Assembly (NCBI GenBank): GCA_976226885.1
Contig: OZ320321.1
Coordinates: 60,326,001-60,390,000 of the forward strand
Length of the DNA stretch: 64,000 bases
Reading direction: 5' to 3'
From: Iphione sp. A-MEVVRFRX5
Taxonomy: Eukaryota
Shown: positions 4,228 to 55,070 of the stretch, piece by piece
Layout of the letters: each line of letters starts with the position of its first letter
How positions within the stretch are numbered: the first letter of the stretch is position 1
Position numbers and translations under genes: made by a program
The notes under the pieces: generated by a model
The model's database searches: none
What the model saw: only the letters and a program-made list of their open reading frames with translations
Told to the model about the DNA's origin: nothing

Positions 4228-6223
4228 ATATGGATACAGAGGGTGGTCAGTGCAGGTCCGGTGTGTACTTAAGTGTTTCTTACTTGTCATCTGCTCTTCC
4301 TGTTGGACTGATACAAGGCGATATGCGTAGCTCTTCGATGACAGATTCTGCTCAACCATTCAGTGTTCACCCCCTGTGCAAGTGTCTTCTCGAGCTCACC
4401 ACACATGTCACCACCTGTGCCCAAATGGTAGTTAATGTAGTTTTCTAATTTTTTTTTAACCCCAGGAAAGTGACACAGGGGGGACAGCTATTTTGGTGAA
4501 GTGTTATGGGTGCATTTTAATTCTTGGTGAAGCATTATTGGGTTCTCCAATTCAAGGTGAAGCATTATTTAGCATTTTCTGGTGATTGGAGATCAAGGAA
4601 TATATTCCTGGTGAAGCATTATCTGCTCTTTTTTCAAGTGTTATGTATGATTTTAATTCTTGGTGTGAAGCGTTATTGGGTACCTCCTGTCCCACCCCCC
4701 CTGTAGAGACGCCATCTCCATGCATAAAACATCTGGATCTTATCGTGTCCTGGCCATACTTCATATTGTAGTGTGCACATGTAATAAGAGCGTATAGTGC
4801 TAGAAGGATGGTTGGTCCGTGAGAACGGTCCGTAACAGAATCCACGATCCGTGATAGGGTACAGTCCGTGACGACTTCCGGACTGGTAGAGATACTGCGT
4901 AGTAGGGGTACTTCGCAGATTGTTTATTTGCTGCGCATAAACAGATGTCTAGACATCCTATTTTTAGCAACTCTTATGTAATGTTGTCATATATAAACCC
5001 ATGTTTTCTGGAATAAACAGACCCTTTCTCTTTGCACGCTAGAGAGAGACCATTCCATGCACAACAATTTAGTGTATTTTGGAGTGAAACTTATATTCTA
5101 CTTTTGTCAAGATTATTTTACTCAAATCCGTTGACTTCTTATTTCTCTCTACACTAGTCATGTTACAATATATCCCCATAAGCACAATCTCGTGATAAAT
5201 CATGTTAACTTTCGGAGGAATTGATATGTGATGTGTCTGGTTCCCTGCTCAGGATCTTATCTAGTTCAGTATGGGATGAGTCAGCCTGACCACCTTGTCC
5301 GCAGGATCAGTTTCCATGTGTCCAATGTTTCGCCATTTATGAGACTACCTGTGGGTCTTGGTTAACTTCCGGGACAGTTCCAGACCCTCGCGCAGAGGGG
5401 GGTGATCCATGTATACAGCAGTGCATTCTTTGTCCAGAACGGTTTTGGAAATTATCACATCAGGGTCAAACTAAGTTTTACTCTCTGTGTACTTTTTAGT
5501 GGATATTGTAAGCATATCTGTAGAAATTGTGTAGTTTTGGTGGAAAGTAAAGTTGTGTAATCTTTGTGTTTTTTGTCTAAATTGAAGCATATCTGTAACA
5601 ATGAGTGGTTATGCAAGTTAGTTATCATCTCATATGATCTAACATATGTTAGAGTCCCTTCCTGATGTAAACTCTCATGTCCCTGGTCATCTGTTTTTCC
5701 ATCTCAAGTCTGCAATAGAGTGAAATTTATGGACATGGCTTATTTTCAAACACTGGACTCCAGCCTAGGGACTCCAGACCCAGACATAAAGAAAGCCTGC
5801 AGTTCACTTCCATATTAATAAAATTTCCCATACATCCAGACTTTGTATATAAGGAAAAACATGCGGACACATGGACACTAGGCCTTGCTGACCTGCTTGG
5901 ATCTGGCCCTACCCATATAAAAAGGAATAATAGCGAAAAGAAAGTGGCCCAAGGCCATGATTAGTACCTACTTTATGTCCATGTTTCCTTTGTCAAAACT
6001 GTAGTGAAAAGCGTCATGATTTTGTTCTACTTTATGCCTGTCCTCCTTGCTGTGCACTGGTACAACTTTAAATTATGATTTAGGGGTACATGTAATTCAG
6101 AACAATGACAGGAAGTGACAACTAAAAAAATGTGATTGAGACAACACCATGGAGGAGACCAGATTCTTTCAGGAAAAGACTTTCTCATACGGACGAAAAC
6201 GACAGAAGACCAGCTTGCAAAGT
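4228..6223. repeat. Copy B of the local duplication
   Basis: Direct-repeat identity to 319-2979 apart from differential insertions. Confidence 0.95.
4767..5167 (+). mobile_element. Solo LTR, 401 bp, ATAT TSD
   Basis: TGTA...TACA termini. ATAT duplicated at 4763-4766 and 5168-5171. ATATAAA at 4991 and AATAAA at 5012. Empty site TTCATATATCCCC in copy A (~717-729). Confidence 0.9.
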
Positions 6224-19894: not shown

Positions 19895-20115
19895 TAAAGT
19901 AGGCACGCATGGAAAGACTGCCTAAGTAGCATACATACTCTAAGAGCATTATATGGGTTTATGGAGAGGTGCATGTGGCTTGTCTCTTATATATATACCT
20001 CTATTTATAATAGAAAAAAAGTCAAAACATCTTCAAGTCCTTCTTTCCCCAGTGGAAAAAACACTGCCCGTGTCTGGCAGGAGAGCCTCTTTCACGAGCA
20101 GCTCGTCTAACTCAC

Positions 20116-20272
20116 CTTAGTCGGACGTTAGCACCCGTATACGACTCGTAAGGCTTCTCAACTTGGTTGAACTCGAACTCATAGCTGGTGTTTTGCGTCA
20201 GTTCGCCGGGCCGGGCCAGCTCCTTGACGAGCGATGTGAATTCGTGGTGGTTACCACGGTCGTAGTACAATT
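20116..20272 (-). CDS. VPS26: VPS26 exon 4 (157 nt)
   Basis: (E)LYYDRGNHHEFTSLVKELARPGELTQNTSYEFEFNQVEKPYESYTGANVRL(R); cag| and |gtgag junctions. Confidence 0.97.
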
Positions 20273-22231
20273 CTGTGGAGGCAGGCCCAAAGACATCAGT
20301 TCTTACTGTCAACACTCGTTTGTTATGGCATGAAATGGACTGGCAACAAACCCTGTATAGCTTGCGAACTTCATATGTTGGATAACAGATGACAGATTAA
20401 ACTCACAAAAATAAATTGGTCCGGTAACAGTTAACACACAAAAAAAACCAAAATTCTTAAATCTCAAGCTGAAATTACATTCACGAAAACAAGGTAAATG
20501 TTCTGCAAGTGCATGTCATGAATAGTTGTCGCCAACCAAAGCGTGAAAAACATGGTCAGGGAGTTCAGCGTTACATCCTATTTCACTTAGAAATGTTTTT
20601 TTTGACAAGATAAAAACCGTAAAAAAGGAGTGTTGCCTTAACGTGGTTGTTACTGACAAATACCGTGAGGCATACGTGGGCAACAAGATAGTGACAGTGG
20701 ACAAGACACCCAAACCGGTGGATGCAGACAGTGCATGCTTTGCTGAAAACGAAAACCTACGGGGGTAAGTCGTAAAAAAGTGAATTTTAATCTTCCTGCA
20801 TACGCAATCTTGTATATATATATACTGGCAAGCCTGAGAATATAATCTTCAGAGATAATGTACGTGTGTGCGTGTACCGGAAGCGGAAGACGCACGGGAC
20901 GAATGTCAGCCTCCCCATCAAAAAGCCTGTTAGTTTCCTGATTTCTGGTTGTTGTTTTTTTTCTATATGAGTACGTTACAAGCAATCTTGCCCCTTCATA
21001 TAGCTAAATGACAGCTGGTGAGATGCTCCGCCTTAACGCACCATTTTAGTGGTTATGGATGCAGACATCACACAACGAATCAGAGTCAGAAGTTTTAGTT
21101 CCTGTTTGTGCCAGGTAAAAATTAACTTTTAGCGAGTGTTTGTCTTAACAGGGTCAATCGAGGTCAATTTCAATTCTCCCTTGACTTAATAAAGAGCATA
21201 TATTGTTGGCATCGATTTTAAGTCATGGCCCTCTTGCTGTATCTAAATGTCTGTCAGGGATGTTTAGGAAACCTGACGTTCGCTTCTCCCTTCCCATTCT
21301 ATCTCTCAGTCAGTTACTATCTTGTCCGAGACACAGCGTGATCGTTAACGGGTCTGCAGTTCTGTCACCGACATTAAATAATAAAAAAAAAAAACACCAG
21401 TAGGTACAGATGAGTACAGTTTATTCAGCCGAAAGAAACCGTCGCAAATTTGTAGGATGCTGTCCAGTTTTCAGTTTCCGTCAGGTTGAGGCGCATAAAA
21501 ACATAATTCTCAGGCCAGCATTACTCAAATCTTGTTAGCTCAAACCGGCGAACAGAATTAGTGTATCGGTCTTGGAGTATGTTTAATGCACTTGGACTCC
21601 TAAAGTGAGTGTGGCATATGAAGGTATTGAGGGCAGAATGACTGGAGGGCGGGGTACCCATTGCCAAGCAAGACCAGCGAGGAGGAGGAAGAGGAGGAGG
21701 AGTGGGAAGAGGAGAATGCCTTTGTTCTACAGTTGAAAGATGTAAATACAAAAGCTCACCACAGGTGCCTCCTAGACACGAATACCAGCCCGTAATAATG
21801 AGGTAGTATTAGCCAGGTGGTGCACATAAAGGGGAGTCGGATAGGCAAACTCTACATGTTTCATCGTTACAATAGTCTCTTCTGAGTCCGAATGCTCCAT
21901 TGCAATATGTGAGCCTACAGAATCCAGCAGATGGACTACTACGGTAAGAACAACCGGTGCTGGGTTATTCGGGGATGGACGCACATTCATTACTTTACTA
22001 CTACGTCAAGTCTTCGGGGGTGGTTGCGCATTTTAAATGAACTGTTTCTGTTCTGGTGTATTCTACAGGATGGACAAGCCACAACGAGACAAGCCCTTGC
22101 CAGCAATTAACAAAATATCAAATAAAAATCTTTACAAAAAACAAAGTTTACAATCACGATGGAATGATGTCTGAAGGTATGATTTGAAACGAACTGTAGT
22201 GGCATTGTTCTGTAGTTGACGGTGTTCTTAC

Positions 22232-22307
22232 CTATTTGTCCTATGAATTCTATTTTAATTCCTTGGTGCTCTAACTTTGTGCCGGCTTTCCGTAATGTGA
22301 TATTTAC
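22232..22307 (-). CDS. VPS26: VPS26 exon 3 (76 nt)
   Basis: VNITLRKAGTKLEHQGIKIEFIGQI; cag| and |gtaag junctions. Confidence 0.97.
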
Positions 22308-22574
22308 CTGAAATACAAAGCAAAAAGTCACATATGTATCTCACTGTACAGATCACACGTGCATAATTTCTGTAGTACATTTCCAAAGATTCTTAGTATT
22401 CTTTTAAAAAGAAAATCAAAAACACATAAATCTCTTCGATCTTTCTTCCAATTACTAGTGATAAGTTGATGGTGGAAGTGTGTCATCAGAAATCTAACTT
22501 GGAGGCATAGTTGCCATCATGTGGGGTAGAGCTGGGAGCACACTGGTATAACCCTTGCCCCTGTCCCTCACACA

Positions 22575-22830
22575 GAGGGTGAAGTAGGGAGTGCAGCGGG
22601 ACATGACCAGCCCTTGTCCCTAGGATGAAGAGTGGAGTATGGAGTGCAGTGGGACATGTCCAGCCGCTGTCCCTAGCATGAAGAGTGGAGCAGGGAGTGC
22701 AGTGGGTCATGACCAGCCACCATCCCTAGCAAGAAGAGTGGAGTAGGGAGTACAGTGGGACATGTCCAGGTACCACCCCTAGCATGAAGAGTGGAGTAGG
22801 GAGTGCAGTGGGACACGACCCTAGCATGCA
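22575..22830. repeat. Minisatellite, ~53-nt unit, ~5 copies, near the exon 2 donor
   Basis: Unit CCCTAGCATGAAGAGTGGAGTAGGGAGTGCAGTGGGACATG... Confidence 0.9.
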
Positions 22831-22862
22831 GAGGGTCCATGCACGGGTCGACTAGGACCTAC

Positions 22863-23006
22863 TTTGCCTGAGACGGTCTCGCCGTCGTAGTAGAGGTAAT
22901 GGCGCTCCTTCTTGCCGTCCTCCGCCTTGATCTCGGCCGTCTTCCGCGTGTCCTGGCCATCGAGCACAATGTCCACGTCGGCGCTCTGGCCGAACCCAAA
23001 GAAACT
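22863..23006 (-). CDS. VPS26: VPS26 exon 2 (144 nt)
   Basis: ttggcag|SFFGFGQSADVDIVLDGQDTRKTAEIKAEDGKKERHYLYYDGETVSGK|gtaggt, a VPS26B-like N-terminus lacking only the Met. Confidence 0.96.
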
Positions 23007-50966: not shown

Positions 50967-51030
50967 ATGGATATCCGACCGAACCACACCATCTATATCA
51001 ACAATCTAAATGAGAAAATCAAGAAAGATG
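50967..51030 (+). CDS. SNRPA: SNF/U1A-U2B'' first coding exon
   Basis: MDIRPNHTIYINNLNEKIKKD; the exon starts at 50939 after ttgcag; donor |gttcgt. Confidence 0.95.
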
Positions 51031-51316
51031 GTTCGTACCCTATTCCAGATACTTCGTAAAATATAAACACAGAGTAAACACATAACATGGTTAGAAATAT
51101 GCCTATGGGAGATGCTTCGTATATAAAGATGTGTTTTCAGTAAATTGTAATCCTTCAGTCGTTTGCTCATCCATATTCATGTCTGTCATCGCCAGTTGAG
51201 AAGGCGGTCTTCTTATTTTGGTTCTATTCGTATTTGCTTATTCGTGTTATTTTGCTATGTTCTAAAATCAATACATGTGCTATTTTCTAAAATAAATGAA
51301 TTACGTTTTCTTGTAG

Positions 51317-51489
51317 AACTGAAGCGATCCCTGTATGCCATCTTCTCCCAGTTTGGACAAATTGTGGATATAGTTGCCTTGAAGACCCTAAAGATGAGAG
51401 GCCAAGCTTTCGTCATTTTCAAAGACATCAACAGTGCCACTAACGCACTTCGATCAATGCAAGGATTTCCATTTTATGAAAAACCAATG
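51317..51489 (+). CDS. SNRPA: SNF/U1A-U2B'' coding exon 2 (173 nt; RRM1)
   Basis: (E)[57 protein letters not shown]; ttgtag| and |gtgcgt junctions. Confidence 0.98.
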
Positions 51490-51944
51490 GTGCGTTGACT
51501 CTTTTTAGGCAGCCCTTTTGTGCTATGTACTAATAGTAAGAGGAAAGAAAAGTGCACTTGTGTTGCCAAAGAAAAATTGTAATACTACAGTAAAATCTTG
51601 GTATATCCATGTATAATAAGTGCATGTACTTGTCACCCAGTGCTGACAGTCCATAATTCGTAGGTAGAAGTCACCCCTGACACGGCAGATAAAAAGGTTG
51701 AATGTCACAATGTAGAGTTTGACTCCAGAGTAAAGGTCATATCCTGTAGGCACGCACATGATTCATCTCTGTCCATCACTCCACTACAGATTTTGTGAGC
51801 TGACGAAATCACAAGGTAGACAAGTGATGTTATAATAGAAATATCTTTACGAAAATAATCATTTGATACATTGCTACATACCTAACGTGTACTCATTAAA
51901 TGACCATAACTAATGAAAAACTCGTATTATATGCCTTATTGCAG

Positions 51945-52099
51945 AGGATATCCTATGCAAAGAAAGATTCAGATGTGATTGCGAAAATGAAGGGGACCTT
52001 TGTCGAGCGACCCAAGAAGAAGCGTAGTGAGGAAGAGCAAGCGGGTGGTGGAAACAAAAAGAAAAAGAAGGCAGCTAGCCAACAGCCTCCTGTACAGAG
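51945..52099 (+). CDS. SNRPA: SNF/U1A-U2B'' coding exon 3 (155 nt)
   Basis: RISYAKKDSDVIAKMKGTFVERPKKKRSEEEQAGGGNKKKKKAASQQPPVQ; ttgcag| and |gtgagt junctions. Confidence 0.97.
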
Positions 52100-53746
52100 G
52101 TGAGTAAAACTCACACAGTTGACCGATTACCAACAAGATTTTAACCATTCGGAACAACGTTGTTTTATCACATGTGTACAACTGACTAATCAAGTGTCAT
52201 TGGTAACGTATAGAAACATACAGTTCTTGTAGCCTCATTTTGAAGTTTACATGAAGCAGCGATCATATGCAGGGAAAAAAACGCGCAAAAATGTTATTTT
52301 GTATAATGATGTCTGTAGGCGATCAGTCAAGTGGACTACAGGACTGGACTGGACTACATGTACTTCCTCACGGAAATCACACCATCGCTTTAAGGGCTTT
52401 CAGTAACCTGTGTTATTATGCGAATAGGAAGATCATAGATGTTAATCAGTGGAGGTCATATCTGCCTATAGTGGTGTGGTGTGAAAGCGGATGATATGAC
52501 CTCCACTTAATGCAAGGAGGGGGGGGGCGTAGTCCAGTTGTAAAAGTGGGAGGAGCTGGTTCTTTACTGCCTGAGCTTCTCTGAGCCGGCACGTAAGGGT
52601 CTTAGATCACATCTGACTAAGGAATGGGTGGGAGAAATCAGTGACCTGGTGTCTGGAGGTGATTGACAGCCCGTGCAGGCCATGGGTAGGGTGGGAGCAC
52701 ACTCCACCAGGCCGCCTCGTGGTCCCCCGAAGCAGTCTTCACCACAATTTAAAATATGTACCTACACGTATTGGTGCATGCATACATGTGAGATGGTCAT
52801 GTGAGCAGGTGCAGCCATACATTAAATGGACTAAGGAACAAGAAAATGGCCTGTGTAGTGTGGAGATTGCTACCCTGTTATGACACAAAGAATGTTGTTG
52901 TCATGCCTCCTGTCTTGGTTGCTTAGATACTTTTGTTGACAAGAAATAGTTCCTATTTTCGTTTTTTGGGGGGGGTCAAATTGTGCAGGGGTCTTAGAAA
53001 GCATACATGAGTGGACACTTGATGAATGGAATCTGAAGTAAAAACAGTGTGTATGAGGCTTGACGGTGAGGGTTTGGCCCCGGGGGGGGGGGGCTATAGA
53101 CTTTATAGGTCCATGCTCTTATAAATTACAAGATATTTATAGGTAACAGGTGACATATTTAGAATGAGACCGAGACTTGGAGGGCATTTGATGTTTAGGC
53201 CGTTAAGAGTAGTACTGCAACAGAACTTAACCCAGTCTGCAGGAATGAAATGAATTTGGACTTAACAGCTGGTTTAACTCGTTAAGTAGATTGAGAACAA
53301 ATAATTTTTGGGTCATCATAACATTTTTTTTTTCAAGAAAACTGGTTGAAAGAAATGCTTCCCCATATAGTATAGCTAGACACTGACAGGGAGTTGGCAG
53401 AAAACCGGGGGCAGGGTCGAGAAGCAACGAAATAAAGATGAGAGATGAAAGACCCCGACTGACGGGGAGTAGAGGAGAGACAGACAGACAGGGCACTAGA
53501 GAGACGCCAGGGAGGGAAGAATGGAAGAGAACAGTGAATGAGATGAATAGGAGAGAAAGTAATCCGAGAATTCAAGAATAATGTCTTAATGACAAAGGTT
53601 TATTTTTTTCTTAATGACAAAGGTTTTTTTTTTTATTGTTTTAGTCCTTTCACCACTGCGCGTTGTACATGACGAAGAGTCAGACATGATTAGCATATCT
53701 TGTAGTCGGTTTTCTCATGATTTTGTCCTTTTCGTCCATGTCGCAG

Positions 53747-53935
53747 GCCTCCTGGTGCTGGTGTGATGGTTCCTCACGTAGCGCCCGCCCAGCAGATTAC
53801 AGCACCTGCGCCTGTACAACCCCTGGTGACGGCCCCACCAACCTCCATCCCAGAACAGCCGCCACATCACATTCTCTTCCTGACGAACCTGCCCGAGGAA
53901 ACCACCGAGATGATGCTTAGCATGCTCTTCAACCA
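53747..53935 (+). CDS. SNRPA: SNF/U1A-U2B'' coding exon 4 (189 nt; linker and start of RRM2)
   Basis: [16 protein letters not shown]...[29 protein letters not shown](Q); phases match the neighbouring exons. Confidence 0.96.
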
Positions 53936-54149
53936 GTATGTACCTGTTTCGGATTTTTTTTTTCATACATAAACGCTTACTAGACTAGTAAATGAACTGC
54001 CATATCATGACTGATCCGACTACAATAAATCTTAACCAAGGCAATTAAAAAAAGGGGGGTGGAGGATGTCCGTCACCCTATTTCACTGTCACTTCCTTTA
54101 AGTGTATCTCGTACGCAAATCTAAAGCAAACCACTCCCTTATCTTCCAG

Positions 54150-54309
54150 GTTCCCGGGATTCAAGGAGGTACGATTGGTTCCTGGCCGCCACGATATTGC
54201 CTTCGTGGAGTTTGACACCGAGGCGCAGGCGGGTGCTGCCAAGGATGCGTTACAAGGATTCAAGATTACGCCGACAAATGCCATGAAAATCTCCTTCGCC
54301 AAGAAGTAA
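54150..54309 (+). CDS. SNRPA: SNF/U1A-U2B'' last coding exon (RRM2)
   Basis: [52 protein letters not shown]; total CDS 741 nt = 246 aa. Confidence 0.98.
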
Positions 54310-54693
54310 AGAGGCTCTGGTATATTGACCTGGGTTGGACAGCATGGGTCTTCTTAGGTCTGTTTATGGACGAGAGGTGTAGGGAAAGTGACAAAGGCAC
54401 CTTTGGTATAAATGTGGTAAGATTCATTGTTCATATTGTACATTAATCATCATTACAAATCTGTTTGCCTCTTCGAATTGTACTAGTTGATCGTCGCGCG
54501 ATTGGGGAAAGCGTTTTTGATCGTTAAGGAAAGGTAAACTGTTCACAGACTTGGTTTGTAAAATCTCAAAATTCACCCCCCCCCCCCCCCACGTGTGTTT
54601 CCCTCCCTGAAGTGAAGTAGCAGCTTTCCAGCAGCTTTGAAACGGAAATGCTGGTTAAACTTTCCCTCTTGGGTACAGACGACAGTGGCTGGC

Positions 54694-54798
54694 TCAGCAT
54701 TGCACCCAGGTCAGTCGGCATTGCACTAGGCAGCCCGTCCGCATTGCACCGTGCTAGCTGGACGGGGTGCCGGCTGATTGGCATTGCACCAAAGCTGA
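54694..54798 (+). promoter_or_regulatory. PIE-like U1A-binding RNA element in the 3' UTR (four AUUGCAC boxes)
   Basis: gcATTGCAC, with boxes at 54699, 54720, 54743 and 54783, inside a hairpin closed by TCAGC/GCTGA. Confidence 0.8.
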
Positions 54799-55064
54799 CT
54801 TGATCACTCTCATTATTACTACCGCCGGTAGTGGCTCCTAATCCTAATAAGAGAACACTCGGACCCTTGACAGGGCGGCAGTATGTGTGGACTGTCAACT
54901 GATCAGAGCAGCAGGTAGATACAATTTCATTTTTAAAAAAGTACTGGAAAGGGATGGTGCACTACATGCTTTAAAAAAAAAAGCTCTTTTCCAAAATTGG
55001 AGGTAAGTTCCTCGGAAGCTGGATTCCATGGATTAGTCAACTTTTTCCAGGTAACACTGTCATC

Positions 55065-55070
55065 AATAAA
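55065..55070 (+). terminator. Candidate poly(A) signal (AATAAA) for the snRNP gene
   Basis: First canonical AATAAA I found downstream of the stop and the PIE-like element. Site use unverified. Confidence 0.4.

What the first reader, a model, noticed from the sequence alone, without database searches (positions are those of the whole stretch)
54684..54808. Four-box PIE-like autoregulatory RNA element in the 3' UTR of an invertebrate SNF/U1A gene
Seen in sequence: the U1A/SNF recognition heptamer AUUGCAC occurs four times in ~90 nt (54699, 54720, 54743, 54783), each preceded by GC, in this gene's own 3' UTR. They sit in one hairpin: outer stem UCAGC/GCUGA; GUCAGUC pairs with GAUUGGC (or GUCAGUCGGC with GCCGGCUGAU); inner stem CCCGUCC/GGACGGG. 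Box 3 forms a C-G-closed 10-nt loop AUUGCACCGU, like the U1 snRNA stem-loop II loop. The first-box context CAGC-AUUGCAC-CCAG-GUC closely matches the human U1A PIE as I recall it (CAGC-AUUGUAC-CCAG-A-GUC), and boxes 1 and 4 occupy the PIE topology. Established: the two-box vertebrate PIE binds two U1A molecules and inhibits poly(A) polymerase. Inference: this autoregulation predates the U1A/U2B'' split, and here may form a four-protein, more cooperative switch. Caveat: the nearest canonical AATAAA is ~275 nt downstream, farther than in the human gene.
Basis: partly seen in the sequence, partly recalled or inferred. Interest (0 to 1): 0.88.

Follow-up and report, generated by a model that had tools for sequence, protein, structure and literature searches.

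The report
Four-site PIE-like element, invertebrate SNF
The 3' untranslated region of an invertebrate gene for the spliceosomal protein SNF/U1A carries four copies of that protein's own RNA recognition site in one folded element. Similar site clusters occur in the same place in worms, brachiopods, ribbon worms and molluscs, so the self-regulation loop known from vertebrate U1A is probably much older than thought.

Summary
GCAUUGCAC occurs four times on the + strand at 54699, 54720, 54743 and 54783. These are the only + strand copies of AUUGCAC in the 64 kb. They start 390 nt after the stop codon of a clean five-exon, 246-aa U1A/U2B''/SNF gene with the ancestral VALKT loop.

With the boxes held single-stranded, the flanks fold into one irregular hairpin (-43.5 kcal/mol; shuffles -26.8 +/- 3.8). 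In it every box directly follows a C-G closing pair.

The 5' part (54695-54715) matches the Rfam vertebrate PIE consensus at 19 of 21 bases. Boxes 1 and 4 sit where the two PIE boxes sit.

Ten orthologues were examined. SNF 3' UTRs of an annelid, a brachiopod, a nemertean, a scallop, an octopus and two transcript contigs also carry AUUGCAC boxes, mostly as arrays of U1 stem-loop II-like hairpins. There are 24 boxes where 1.2 are expected. A tick and one further transcript have none.

It is not a formal PIE member. Stem 2 is missing, the poly(A) signal is 276 nt away, and the Rfam model gives no hit.

Best reading: an SNF autoregulatory element. Binding and mechanism are untested. The papers I could search describe PIE only in vertebrates.

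The parts
50967..54309 (+). U1A/U2B''/SNF gene. Five exons: 50967-51030, 51317-51489, 51945-52099, 53747-53935, 54150-54309. 246 aa, stop codon 54307-54309.
   Evidence: Spliced CDS of 741 nt with all GT-AG introns. RRM1 is about 86% identical to Drosophila SNF in PDB 6f4g. Closest full-length proteins are about 78% identical, from lophotrochozoans. The tree places it weakly in a clade that contains annelids.
54310..55070 (+). Presumed 3' UTR, from the stop codon to the first canonical AATAAA (55065-55070). A weak TATAAA lies at 54407 and AATAAG at 54846.
   Evidence: Hexamer scan. No transcript data for this species. Orthologous transcript contigs L002 and L130 carry their boxes inside the mRNA.
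54694..54798 (+). Whole four-box element: one irregular hairpin from the outer stem UCAGC (54694-98) to GCUGA (54794-98).
   Evidence: Fold with boxes held unpaired: -43.5 kcal/mol against -26.8 +/- 3.8 for 500 shuffles of the non-box bases, z = -4.4, 0 of 500 as stable.
54699..54705 (+). Box 1, AUUGCAC. The preceding C54698 pairs with G54794. It sits on the 5' side of an 11 x 11 nt internal loop.
   Evidence: The context 54695-54715 matches the Rfam PIE consensus at 19 of 21 bases with one gap.
54710..54719 (+). 5' strand (GUCAGUCGGC) of the 10-bp central helix. It pairs with 54773-54782 (GCUGAUUGGC) and corresponds to PIE stem 3.
   Evidence: Constrained fold.
54720..54726 (+). Box 2, AUUGCAC. 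C54719 pairs with G54773. It lies in an asymmetric internal loop (9 x 1 nt).
54729..54771 (+). Apical arm: GGCA/UGCC (54729-32 / 54768-71), CCCGUCC/GGACGGG (54734-40 / 54760-66), and a GC/GC pair closing the box-3 loop.
   Evidence: Constrained fold.
54743..54749 (+). Box 3, AUUGCAC, in the apical loop. CCGC-AUUGCACC-..-GC is nearly the same as the Drosophila U1 stem-loop II ligand GC[AUUGCACCUC]GC.
   Evidence: Ligand sequence from PMC5992148.
54773..54782 (+). 3' strand of the central helix (GCUGAUUGGC).
54783..54789 (+). Box 4, AUUGCAC. C54782 pairs with G54710. It sits on the 3' side of the 11 x 11 internal loop, opposite box 1. An alternative local hairpin is UUGGC[AUUGCACCAAA]GCUGA.
55001..55008 (+). 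5' splice-site-like AGGUAAGU, 57 nt upstream of AATAAA. A possible U1 snRNP site or the donor of a 48-nt mini-intron. Whether it belongs to the system is uncertain.
   Evidence: Vertebrate U1A 3' UTRs carry a U1 site that acts together with PIE (PMC3157836).

Best explanation
The element is a cis-acting autoregulatory site in the 3' UTR of the SNF (U1A/U2B'') mRNA.

It displays four AUUGCAC heptamers, the sequence that SNF/U1A RRM1 reads in U1 snRNA stem-loop II. Each heptamer directly follows a C-G closing pair, within one folded hairpin.

Proposed mechanism:
- SNF made in excess of what U1 and U2 snRNPs absorb binds these sites on its own (pre-)mRNA and lowers its output. This is negative feedback.
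- By analogy with the vertebrate PIE, the most likely step affected is 3'-end formation or polyadenylation in the nucleus.
- Four sites, and box-box pairing in the free RNA that the protein must open, would make the response steeper.

Shown by sequence: the boxes, the fold that presents them, the near-identity of the 5' part to the PIE consensus, and the recurrence of such boxes in SNF 3' UTRs of several phyla.

Inferred: that the mRNA includes the element, that SNF binds it, the direction of the effect, and the step affected.
For: - Four boxes in 91 nt, and no others on the + strand in 64 kb.
- The host gene is SNF-type and its RRM1 is about 86% identical to Drosophila SNF. That protein's binding to GC[AUUGCACCUC]GC has been solved and measured (PMC5992148).
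- With boxes unpaired, the flanks fold at z = -4.4 versus shuffles, and all four boxes follow a C-G pair.
- 54695-54715 matches the Rfam RF00460 consensus at 19 of 21 bases, and boxes 1 and 4 lie in the PIE positions.
- Orthologues carry sense-strand boxes downstream of the stop codon: Lingula 4, Lineus 4-5, Pecten 3, Ridgeia 2, Octopus 1, transcript L002 2, transcript L130 5 plus 2 degenerate.
- Enrichment: 24 AUUGCAC in 19.4 kb of sense 3' flank against 18 in 281 kb of background, 1.2 expected, P about 1e-22. Without the window: 20 against 1.8 expected, P about 8e-15.
- 19 of 24 UTR boxes form C-G-closed hairpins with a stem of at least 4 bp, against 0 of 18 background boxes (P = 1e-7).
- A covariance model trained on 9 hairpins finds the untrained ones in Lineus, Ridgeia, Octopus and lamprey.
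- The full heptamer is invariant, not only GCAC.
Against: - There is no transcript evidence that this species' mRNA reaches 54699. A weak TATAAA at 54407 could end a shorter mRNA.
- The canonical poly(A) signal is 276 nt downstream, whereas the PIE lies just upstream of the signal, at a conserved distance (PMC5071671, PMC6884704).
- PIE stem 2 cannot form, because CAAA stands where CUGG should be.
- The Rfam PIE model gives no hit in the window, even on a 221-nt stretch at E <= 10.
- My hairpin model scores the window boxes at only 13 and 10.6 bits.
- The free-RNA minimum-energy fold buries parts of the boxes.
[quoted passage not shown] The U1A inhibitory peptide region is poorly conserved here (alignment).
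- The tick and one transcript (L129) lack boxes.
- No close relative was found, so there is no alignable orthologue and no true covariation test.
Confidence: 0.72

Rival explanations
1. The element binds SNF and feeds back on SNF output, but not by inhibiting poly(A) polymerase. Candidate steps are the choice between a proximal and a distal poly(A) site, splicing of a 3' UTR mini-intron coupled to nonsense-mediated decay, U1 snRNP-dependent repression through the nearby 5' splice-site-like sequence, nuclear retention, or cytoplasmic decay or translation control. This shares the binding step with the best explanation and differs in what follows.
For: - The boxes are far from the poly(A) signal here (276 nt). 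They are at least 700 nt from the 3' end in transcript L130.
- Lingula and Octopus have poly(A) hexamers both before and after the boxes.
- AGGUAAGU lies at 55001, 57 nt before AATAAA, with a possible 48-nt intron. U1-complementary 7-mers are roughly 4-fold enriched in these UTRs.
- The poly(A) polymerase C-terminus is reported as not conserved outside vertebrates (PMC9136276).
Against: None of these steps has direct support. The 5' splice-site enrichment rests on overlapping counts and few sites. The near-identity to the PIE 5' half argues for a shared mechanism.
Confidence: 0.3
2. The boxes are bound mainly by another GCAC-reading protein, the RBPMS/MEC-8/couch potato family. These proteins bind tandem GCAC motifs as dimers and can bind U1 hairpin II. 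The element would then serve control by that protein rather than self-control by SNF.
For: Four GCAC motifs are spaced 14-33 nt apart. MEC-8 RRM1 binds tandem GCAC with spacers of 8 nt or more, and binds U1 hairpin II with a KD of 0.24 uM (PMC5311487).
Against: The full heptamer AUUGCAC plus the preceding C-G pair is kept in nearly every box across phyla, not only GCAC. The boxes are tied to the SNF gene itself. No GCAC in the element lies outside a heptamer.
Confidence: 0.06
3. The cluster has no function. It is a chance or recently duplicated short repeat, or a fragment derived from U1 snRNA, lying in or beyond the UTR.
For: There is no primary-sequence similarity to orthologous UTRs beyond the boxes. 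Box number and arrangement vary widely between species. L130 looks like a recent tandem amplification, with identical CCAAC/GUUGG stems.
Against: - Chance is about 3e-7.
- No tandem repeat is detected, and the element is unique in the window.
- There is no U1 hit in Rfam.
- The same kind of box recurs in the same gene region in at least four other phyla, at P about 8e-15 without the window.
Confidence: 0.04
4. The AUUGCAC motifs reflect microRNA biology. Either they are a cluster of miR-92-family precursors (mature miR-92 starts with AUUGCAC, from my own knowledge), or they are four miR-92 seed matches (GUGCAAU) in a transcript from the opposite strand.
For: The heptamer equals the miR-92 family seed region. 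Box 2 plus 3 nt (AUUGCACUAG) resembles miR-92b as I recall it.
Against: - The boxes are 21-40 nt apart, too close for separate precursors, and lie in loops rather than stems.
- No miRNA family hit at E <= 10.
- No coding gene is evident on the - strand downstream up to 64 kb, and the - strand ORF across the element has no Pfam match.
- Orthologous transcripts carry the boxes in the SNF sense orientation.
Confidence: 0.02

Closest known systems
Vertebrate U1A polyadenylation inhibition element (PIE; Rfam RF00460; Boelens 1993, Gunderson 1994/1997, Varani 2000, as cited in PMC9977717 and PMC6884704)
   Same: - It lies in the 3' UTR of the gene for the protein that binds it.
- AUUG(C/U)AC heptamers each follow a C-G closing pair in one stem structure.
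- The outer stem is CAGC/GCUG.
- The 5' part CAGC-AUUGCAC-CCAG-GUCAGU matches the consensus cAGC-AUUGuAC-CCAG-A-GUCUGU at 19 of 21 bases.
- Boxes 1 and 4 take the places of PIE boxes 1 and 2, and the central helix takes the place of stem 3.
   Different: - Four boxes instead of two.
- About 50 nt carrying boxes 2 and 3 stand where the PIE has a small apical loop.
- Stem 2 is absent, so boxes 1 and 4 face each other in an 11 x 11 loop.
- AATAAA is 276 nt away, instead of about 10 nt.
- No Rfam hit.
- The host is a single ancestral-type SNF gene (VALKT loop), not the vertebrate U1A paralogue.
- The inhibitory peptide region is poorly conserved.
U1 snRNA stem-loop II, the natural SNF/U1A RRM1 site (Drosophila ligand GC[AUUGCACCUC]GC, PMC5992148)
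   Same: AUUGCAC lies on the 5' side of a loop closed by C-G. Box 3 (CCGC-AUUGCACC..GC) is almost the same sequence. The orthologue hairpins have 10-12 nt loops and 4-8 bp stems, like stem-loop II.
   Different: It sits in an mRNA 3' UTR, not an snRNA. Three of the four window boxes lie in internal loops rather than a 10-nt hairpin loop.
Arrays of stem-loop II-like hairpins in SNF 3' UTRs of Lingula, Lineus, Pecten, Octopus, Ridgeia and transcript L130. This group is defined here; I found no description of it in the papers searched.
   Same: Same gene, same region, same strand and same heptamer with a C-G closing pair. The stem CAGC/GCUG recurs in Lingula, Pecten, Ridgeia and window box 1.
   Different: In those species each box has its own separate hairpin, spaced 25-260 nt apart. 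In the window all four boxes are packed into one 105-nt nested fold, and they score poorly with the hairpin model (13 bits).
Other U1A-regulated 3' ends (IgM secretory poly(A) site, SMN; cited in PMC3157836 and PMC9977717) and U1 snRNP sites that repress poly(A) sites (Guan 2007)
   Same: U1A-type boxes near 3'-processing signals. A 5' splice-site-like sequence lies near the poly(A) signal (55001).
   Different: Those elements act on other genes or involve non-consensus sites. Here the sites are consensus and lie in the protein's own gene.

Membership tests
Vertebrate U1A PIE (Rfam RF00460) | Lies in the 3' UTR of the U1A/SNF-family gene's own mRNA | tested here: inconclusive
   The genomic position is right: 390-480 nt after the stop codon and before the first AATAAA. 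Relatives' transcripts contain their boxes. There is no transcript data for this species.
Vertebrate U1A PIE (Rfam RF00460) | At least two AUUG(C/U)AC boxes, each directly 3' of a C-G closing pair, in internal loops of one stem structure | tested here: met
   The constrained fold places all four boxes after C-G pairs. Boxes 1, 2 and 4 lie in internal loops, and the fold is z = -4.4 against shuffles.
Vertebrate U1A PIE (Rfam RF00460) | 4-bp stem 2 (CCAG/CUGG) separating the two box loops | tested here: not met
   CCAG follows box 1, but CAAA follows box 4, so no pairing is possible in that register.
Vertebrate U1A PIE (Rfam RF00460) | Poly(A) signal immediately downstream, at a conserved short distance | tested here: not met
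   The consensus has AUUAAA about 10 nt after stem 1. Here the first AATAAA is 276 nt after box 4, and only AATAAG occurs at +57.
Vertebrate U1A PIE (Rfam RF00460) | Score at or above the Rfam gathering threshold (50 bits) | tested here: not met
   No RF00460 hit at E <= 10 on 3.5 kb or on 221 nt. Orthologues reach 25 bits (L130) and 22.8 bits (Pecten), both below threshold.
Vertebrate U1A PIE (Rfam RF00460) | Cooperative binding of two protein molecules and inhibition of poly(A) polymerase through the U1A 103-119 peptide and the polymerase C-terminus | not testable with these tools
   The peptide region aligns as FVERPKKKRSEEEQ against frog FVERDRKRQEKRKV. A basic patch is kept but the sequence is not. 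The polymerase gene is not in the window.
U1 snRNA stem-loop II-type SNF/U1A RRM1 binding site | AUUGCAC at the 5' side of a loop closed by a C-G pair | tested here: met
   Box 3 is nearly identical to the Drosophila stem-loop II ligand.
U1 snRNA stem-loop II-type SNF/U1A RRM1 binding site | Cognate protein with intact RRM1 RNP motifs | tested here: met
   Exon 2 is about 86% identical to Drosophila SNF RRM1 (PDB 6f4g), E = 5e-29.
Lophotrochozoan SNF 3' UTR hairpin arrays (defined here, model R1) | Each box in its own hairpin with a 10-12 nt loop and a stem of at least 4 bp | tested here: not met
   Only box 4 passes the strict scan, with two G-U pairs. Model R1 gives 13 and 10.6 bits for boxes 2 and 1.
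miR-92 family precursor cluster | Roughly 60-nt hairpins with AUUGCAC in the 3' arm of the stem; a match to Rfam miRNA models | tested here: not met
   The spacing is 21-40 nt, the boxes lie in loops, and no miRNA family hit appears.
RBPMS/MEC-8 tandem GCAC site | Two or more GCAC motifs separated by about 8-14 nt | tested here: met
   Four GCAC motifs have spacers of 14, 16 and 33 nt. This is not discriminating, because every GCAC sits inside a full AUUGCAC. Binding itself is not testable here.

The most novel reading that the evidence does not exclude
The element is a true homologue of the vertebrate PIE. On this reading, a 3' UTR mimic of U1 stem-loop II with a CAGC/GCUG outer stem already controlled SNF dosage in the bilaterian ancestor, before the jawed-vertebrate duplication that produced U1A and U2B''. 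It has since been expanded (four nested sites here, arrays of 3-7 hairpins elsewhere) or lost (tick). In this species it would work as a four-protein cooperative switch, possibly together with the U1-type site near the poly(A) signal.
Probability: 0.35. Interest if true: 0.78.

Novelty: new variant of a known kind. Interest (0 to 1): 0.64.

Why it matters
U1A autoregulation through the PIE is a textbook case of a protein controlling the 3'-end processing of its own mRNA. The papers I could search describe it only for vertebrates. They tie it to features reported as conserved in vertebrates: the poly(A) polymerase C-terminus and a fixed short distance to the poly(A) signal.

Finding the same recognition heptamers in the own 3' UTR of single-copy SNF genes in annelid-like, brachiopod, nemertean and mollusc genomes has three consequences:
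- One of these copies has a 5' half almost identical to the PIE consensus. Self-control of this protein therefore seems not to be a by-product of the U1A/U2B'' split, and is probably hundreds of millions of years older.
- It raises the question of how one protein that serves both U1 and U2 snRNPs senses its free pool.
- The natural variants with 1 to 7 sites at very different distances from the poly(A) site could show whether polymerase inhibition is the ancestral mechanism or a later vertebrate refinement.

Tried and rejected
1. One scan of JGI metagenome contigs for three CATTGCAC boxes within short spacers. It returned 120 loci, mostly tandem repeats. None encodes SNF (tblastn).

2. Search for close relatives of the window protein. 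Two profile searches and one library-wide phmmer found nothing above about 78-82% identity. There is therefore no alignable orthologous UTR and no real covariation test of the nested fold.

3. Vertebrate positive control. The Xenopus locus was withheld by the tool, and I did not pursue it by other means. I used the Rfam consensus printed instead. Nasonia was not on record, so no insect was examined.

4. The lamprey locus shows only one stem-loop II-like hairpin, 1478 nt after the stop codon. It is unclear whether that lies in the UTR.

5. I did not type the spliced 246-aa protein into any tool. For that reason the exact-sequence look-ups for this species (its cluster and its transcripts) were left out.

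6. The pair counts on alignment A4 are circular, because those hairpins were selected for pairing. I rely instead on the comparison of 19 of 24 UTR boxes against 0 of 18 background boxes.

7. Rejected readings: a tandem repeat, a repeated element in the window, coding ORFs across the element, snRNA or miRNA families, and an overlapping convergent gene.

8. Literature searches found no report of a PIE outside vertebrates. Subscription journals are mostly not held, so this is not proof that none exists.
Full report
**1. Observation**

The window contains ATTGCAC six times. The four + strand copies lie at 54699, 54720, 54743 and 54783, and each is preceded by GC. With the window's base composition, four copies in any 91-nt stretch have a probability of about 3e-7. 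The stretch is not a tandem repeat. It is unique in the window and shares nothing but the boxes with orthologous loci.

**2. The host gene**

Upstream on the same strand lies a five-exon gene: 50967-51030, 51317-51489, 51945-52099, 53747-53935 and 54150-54309. All introns are GT-AG. The 741-nt CDS encodes a 246-aa protein with two RRMs and the C-terminus KISFAKK.

- Exon 2 is about 86% identical to Drosophila SNF RRM1 (PDB 6f4g, E = 5e-29).
- It carries the beta2/loop 3 sequence VALKT. Delaney et al. assign this sequence to the single ancestral protein that existed before the jawed-vertebrate duplication into U1A (LVSRS) and U2B'' (PMC4114683).
- The nearest full-length proteins are lophotrochozoan, about 78% identical over the whole protein (an unnamed JGI protein and the annelid Ridgeia). 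Vertebrate U1A is at 67% or less.
- A maximum-likelihood tree puts the window protein in a weakly supported clade (90/79) that also holds Capitella and Ridgeia.

The source is therefore an invertebrate, probably an annelid or an allied lophotrochozoan. No close relative is present in the databases reached.

**3. Position relative to 3'-end signals**

Box 1 starts 390 nt after the stop codon. Between the stop codon and the element the only hexamer variant is TATAAA at 54407. After the element come AATAAG at 54846 and the first canonical AATAAA at 55065, 276 nt after box 4. I have no transcript data for this species, so the inclusion of the element in the mRNA is inferred.

**4. Structure**

The unconstrained fold (-55.2 kcal/mol, z = -1.98) pairs the palindromic UGCA cores of the boxes with one another.

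When the 28 box nucleotides are forbidden to pair, as they would be when read by an RRM, the rest folds at -43.5 kcal/mol. Five hundred shuffles of the non-box positions give -26.8 +/- 3.8, so z = -4.4 and none of the 500 is as stable.

The helices of the constrained fold are:
- 54694-98 UCAGC with 54794-98 GCUGA.
- 54710-19 GUCAGUCGGC with 54773-82 GCUGAUUGGC.
- 54729-32 GGCA with 54768-71 UGCC.
- 54734-40 CCCGUCC with 54760-66 GGACGGG.
- A GC/GC pair at the top.

In this fold every box directly follows a C that is paired to a G: C54698-G54794, C54719-G54773, C54742-G54757 and C54782-G54710. This C-G pair plus AUUGCAC is what U1A and SNF recognise in U1 stem-loop II (established knowledge; ligand sequences in PMC5992148).

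The boxes are placed as follows:
- Boxes 1 and 4 face each other in a symmetric 11 x 11 nt internal loop.
- Box 2 lies in a 9 x 1 internal loop.
- Box 3 lies in the apical loop. Its context, CCGC-AUUGCACC, is almost the Drosophila stem-loop II sequence.

**5. Comparison with the vertebrate PIE**

The Rfam RF00460 consensus and its structure were printed by cmscan. The order is: stem 1 cAGC, box AUUGuAC, stem 2 CCAG, an A, stem 3 GUCUG, a short loop, CAGAC, box AUUGcAC, stem 2' CUGG, an a, stem 1' GCUg, and then AUUAAA about 10 nt further on.

Similarities:
- Window 54695-54715 aligns to the 5' half with 19 identities in 21 aligned bases and one gap.
- Topologically, the outer stem corresponds to stem 1, the central helix to stem 3, box 1 to PIE box 1, and box 4 to PIE box 2.

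Differences:
- CAAA stands where CUGG should be, so stem 2 cannot form.
- An arm of about 50 nt with two more boxes replaces the small apical loop.
- The poly(A) signal is not adjacent.

The Rfam model reports nothing in the window at E <= 10, even on a 221-nt stretch. No Rfam family reaches its threshold anywhere in the window. The element works like a PIE in design but fails three defining features of the curated family.

**6. Conservation, the decisive test available**

I fetched the SNF loci or transcripts of ten relatives. I then scanned the sense strand downstream of each stop codon.

- **Lingula (brachiopod):** boxes at +173, +197, +224 (AUUGUAC) and +282. Three of them lie in C-G-closed hairpins.
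- **Lineus (nemertean):** four hairpins at +1492 to +1839, after an insertion of palindromic repeats.
- **Pecten (scallop):** three hairpins at +407, +670 and +706, with AATAAA about 130 nt later.
- **Ridgeia (annelid):** AUUGUAC and AUUGCAC at +138 and +148, plus a degenerate CUUGCAC hairpin.
- **Octopus:** one hairpin with an 8-bp stem at +134.
- **JGI transcript L002:** two boxes at +125 and +152.
- **Logan transcript L130:** five perfect and two degenerate hairpins, all with CCAAC/GUUGG stems, at +203 to +403.
- **Ixodes (tick) and JGI transcript L129:** none.
- **Lamprey:** a single hairpin at +1478, 22 nt after a GGUAAGUAC motif. Its status is uncertain.

L002 and L130 have uninterrupted coding sequences, so they are transcripts. 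The boxes are therefore part of the RNA in those species.

Counts:
- 24 AUUGCAC in 19.4 kb of sense 3' flank, against 18 in 281 kb of all other sequence on both strands. The expectation is 1.2 and the Poisson P is about 1e-22.
- Leaving the window out: 20 observed against 1.8 expected, P about 8e-15.
- 19 of the 24 UTR boxes form C-G-closed hairpins with loops of 10-12 nt and stems of at least 4 bp. None of the 18 background boxes does (Fisher P = 1e-7).
- A covariance model built from nine hairpins of three sources recovers the untrained hairpins of Lineus, Ridgeia, Octopus and lamprey, and nothing outside SNF 3' flanks below E = 1.
- The Rfam PIE model itself gives sub-threshold hits exactly on the hairpins of L130 (25 bits) and Pecten (22.8 bits).

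The stem CAGC/GCUG, which is PIE stem 1, recurs in Lingula, Pecten, Ridgeia and window box 1. Human and Drosophila U1 stem-loop II have other stem sequences. The shared stem therefore hints at common descent, but it is too short to prove it.

**7. What it most likely is**

It is a binding platform for the gene's own product, giving negative feedback on SNF output. I put the confidence that it is a functional SNF-binding cis-element at about 0.7.

The step affected is uncertain. Polyadenylation inhibition is the known precedent, but several facts leave room for other mechanisms:
- The boxes are far from the poly(A) signal, both here and in L130.
- The inhibitory peptide is weakly conserved.

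The alternatives include poly(A) site choice, U1-dependent repression, and a 3' UTR intron. A strong 5' splice-site-like AGGUAAGU lies at 55001, 57 nt before AATAAA. With the AG at 55050 it would define a 48-nt interval. U1-complementary 7-mers are roughly 4-fold enriched in these UTRs, but that rests on few and overlapping counts.

**8. Rivals**

- **RBPMS/MEC-8 family.** These proteins bind tandem GCAC motifs and even U1 hairpin II (PMC5311487). However, the whole heptamer plus the C-G pair is conserved, and the link to the SNF gene is specific.
- **miR-92-type readings.** These are excluded by the spacing, by the loop position of the boxes, by the absence of Rfam hits, and by the sense orientation in transcripts.
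- **Chance or neutral repeat.** This is excluded by the cross-phylum enrichment.

**9. Novelty**

In the papers I could search, the PIE is described as conserved among vertebrates or mammals (PMC5071671, PMC3157836, PMC6884704). The evolutionary study of the U1A/U2B''/SNF family does not mention UTRs or polyadenylation at all. Eight full-text searches found no invertebrate PIE.

I therefore class the element as a new variant of a known kind, with two reservations. Subscription literature is largely outside the library. Binding and function are untested.

**10. Limits**

- No close relative was found, so there is no covariation test for the nested fold.
- No insect, non-vertebrate deuterostome or cnidarian was sampled.
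- The frog control locus was withheld by the tool, and I did not seek it by other means.

Noticed in passing
window 20109-22982 (- strand) and 50967 (+); L003 1-2436, L004 1-1405, L007 1-1718: Vps26 and SNF lie head to head (Vps26 on the - strand, upstream of SNF) in Lingula, Lineus and Ixodes. The window also has Vps26-like exons on the - strand, about 28 kb upstream of the SNF start codon. This is an old microsynteny shared by lophotrochozoans and a tick.
   Followed up: partly
window 55001-55008, 55048-55054, 55065-55070: A 5' splice-site-like AGGTAAGT lies 57 nt upstream of AATAAA, and a CAGGTAAC lies 11 nt upstream of it. GT55003 to AG55050 would form a 48-nt mini-intron preceded by a pyrimidine tract. 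This could be a U1 snRNP repression site, like the one next to the vertebrate PIE, or a 3' UTR intron.
   Followed up: partly
L128 10483-10524 (lamprey, +1456 to +1497 from the stop codon): GGTAAGTAC is followed 22 nt later by a stem-loop II-like hairpin, cctcc-ATTGCACCGC-ggagg. This could be a one-box lamprey counterpart of the U1 site plus PIE. It is unclear whether it lies in the 3' UTR.
   Followed up: no
window 54435-54441 and 54477-54483: Two ATTGTAC (the variant PIE box) lie 42 nt apart in the proximal 3' UTR. Only four + strand copies exist in the whole window. Neither follows a C-G closing pair.
   Followed up: partly
L130 963-1466 (Logan SRR1810205 transcript): Seven hairpins with the same CCAAC/GUUGG stem are present: five with AUUGCAC, one with AUAGCAC and one with AUUGCAU. 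This looks like a recent tandem amplification of one SNF-site hairpin within a 3' UTR.
   Followed up: partly
L004 about 5000-5960 (Lineus SNF 3' flank): Palindromic MITE-like repeats (cttagttttgtac...) are inserted between the stop codon and the hairpin array. They give sub-threshold Rfam hits to several plant MIR families on both strands.
   Followed up: no
window 54576-54590: A run of 15 C lies in the 3' UTR, about 110 nt upstream of the element.
   Followed up: no
L003 6460-6500 and L006 9271-9276: Lingula and Octopus have canonical poly(A) hexamers both upstream and downstream of their box clusters. This suggests short isoforms without boxes and long isoforms with them.
   Followed up: no
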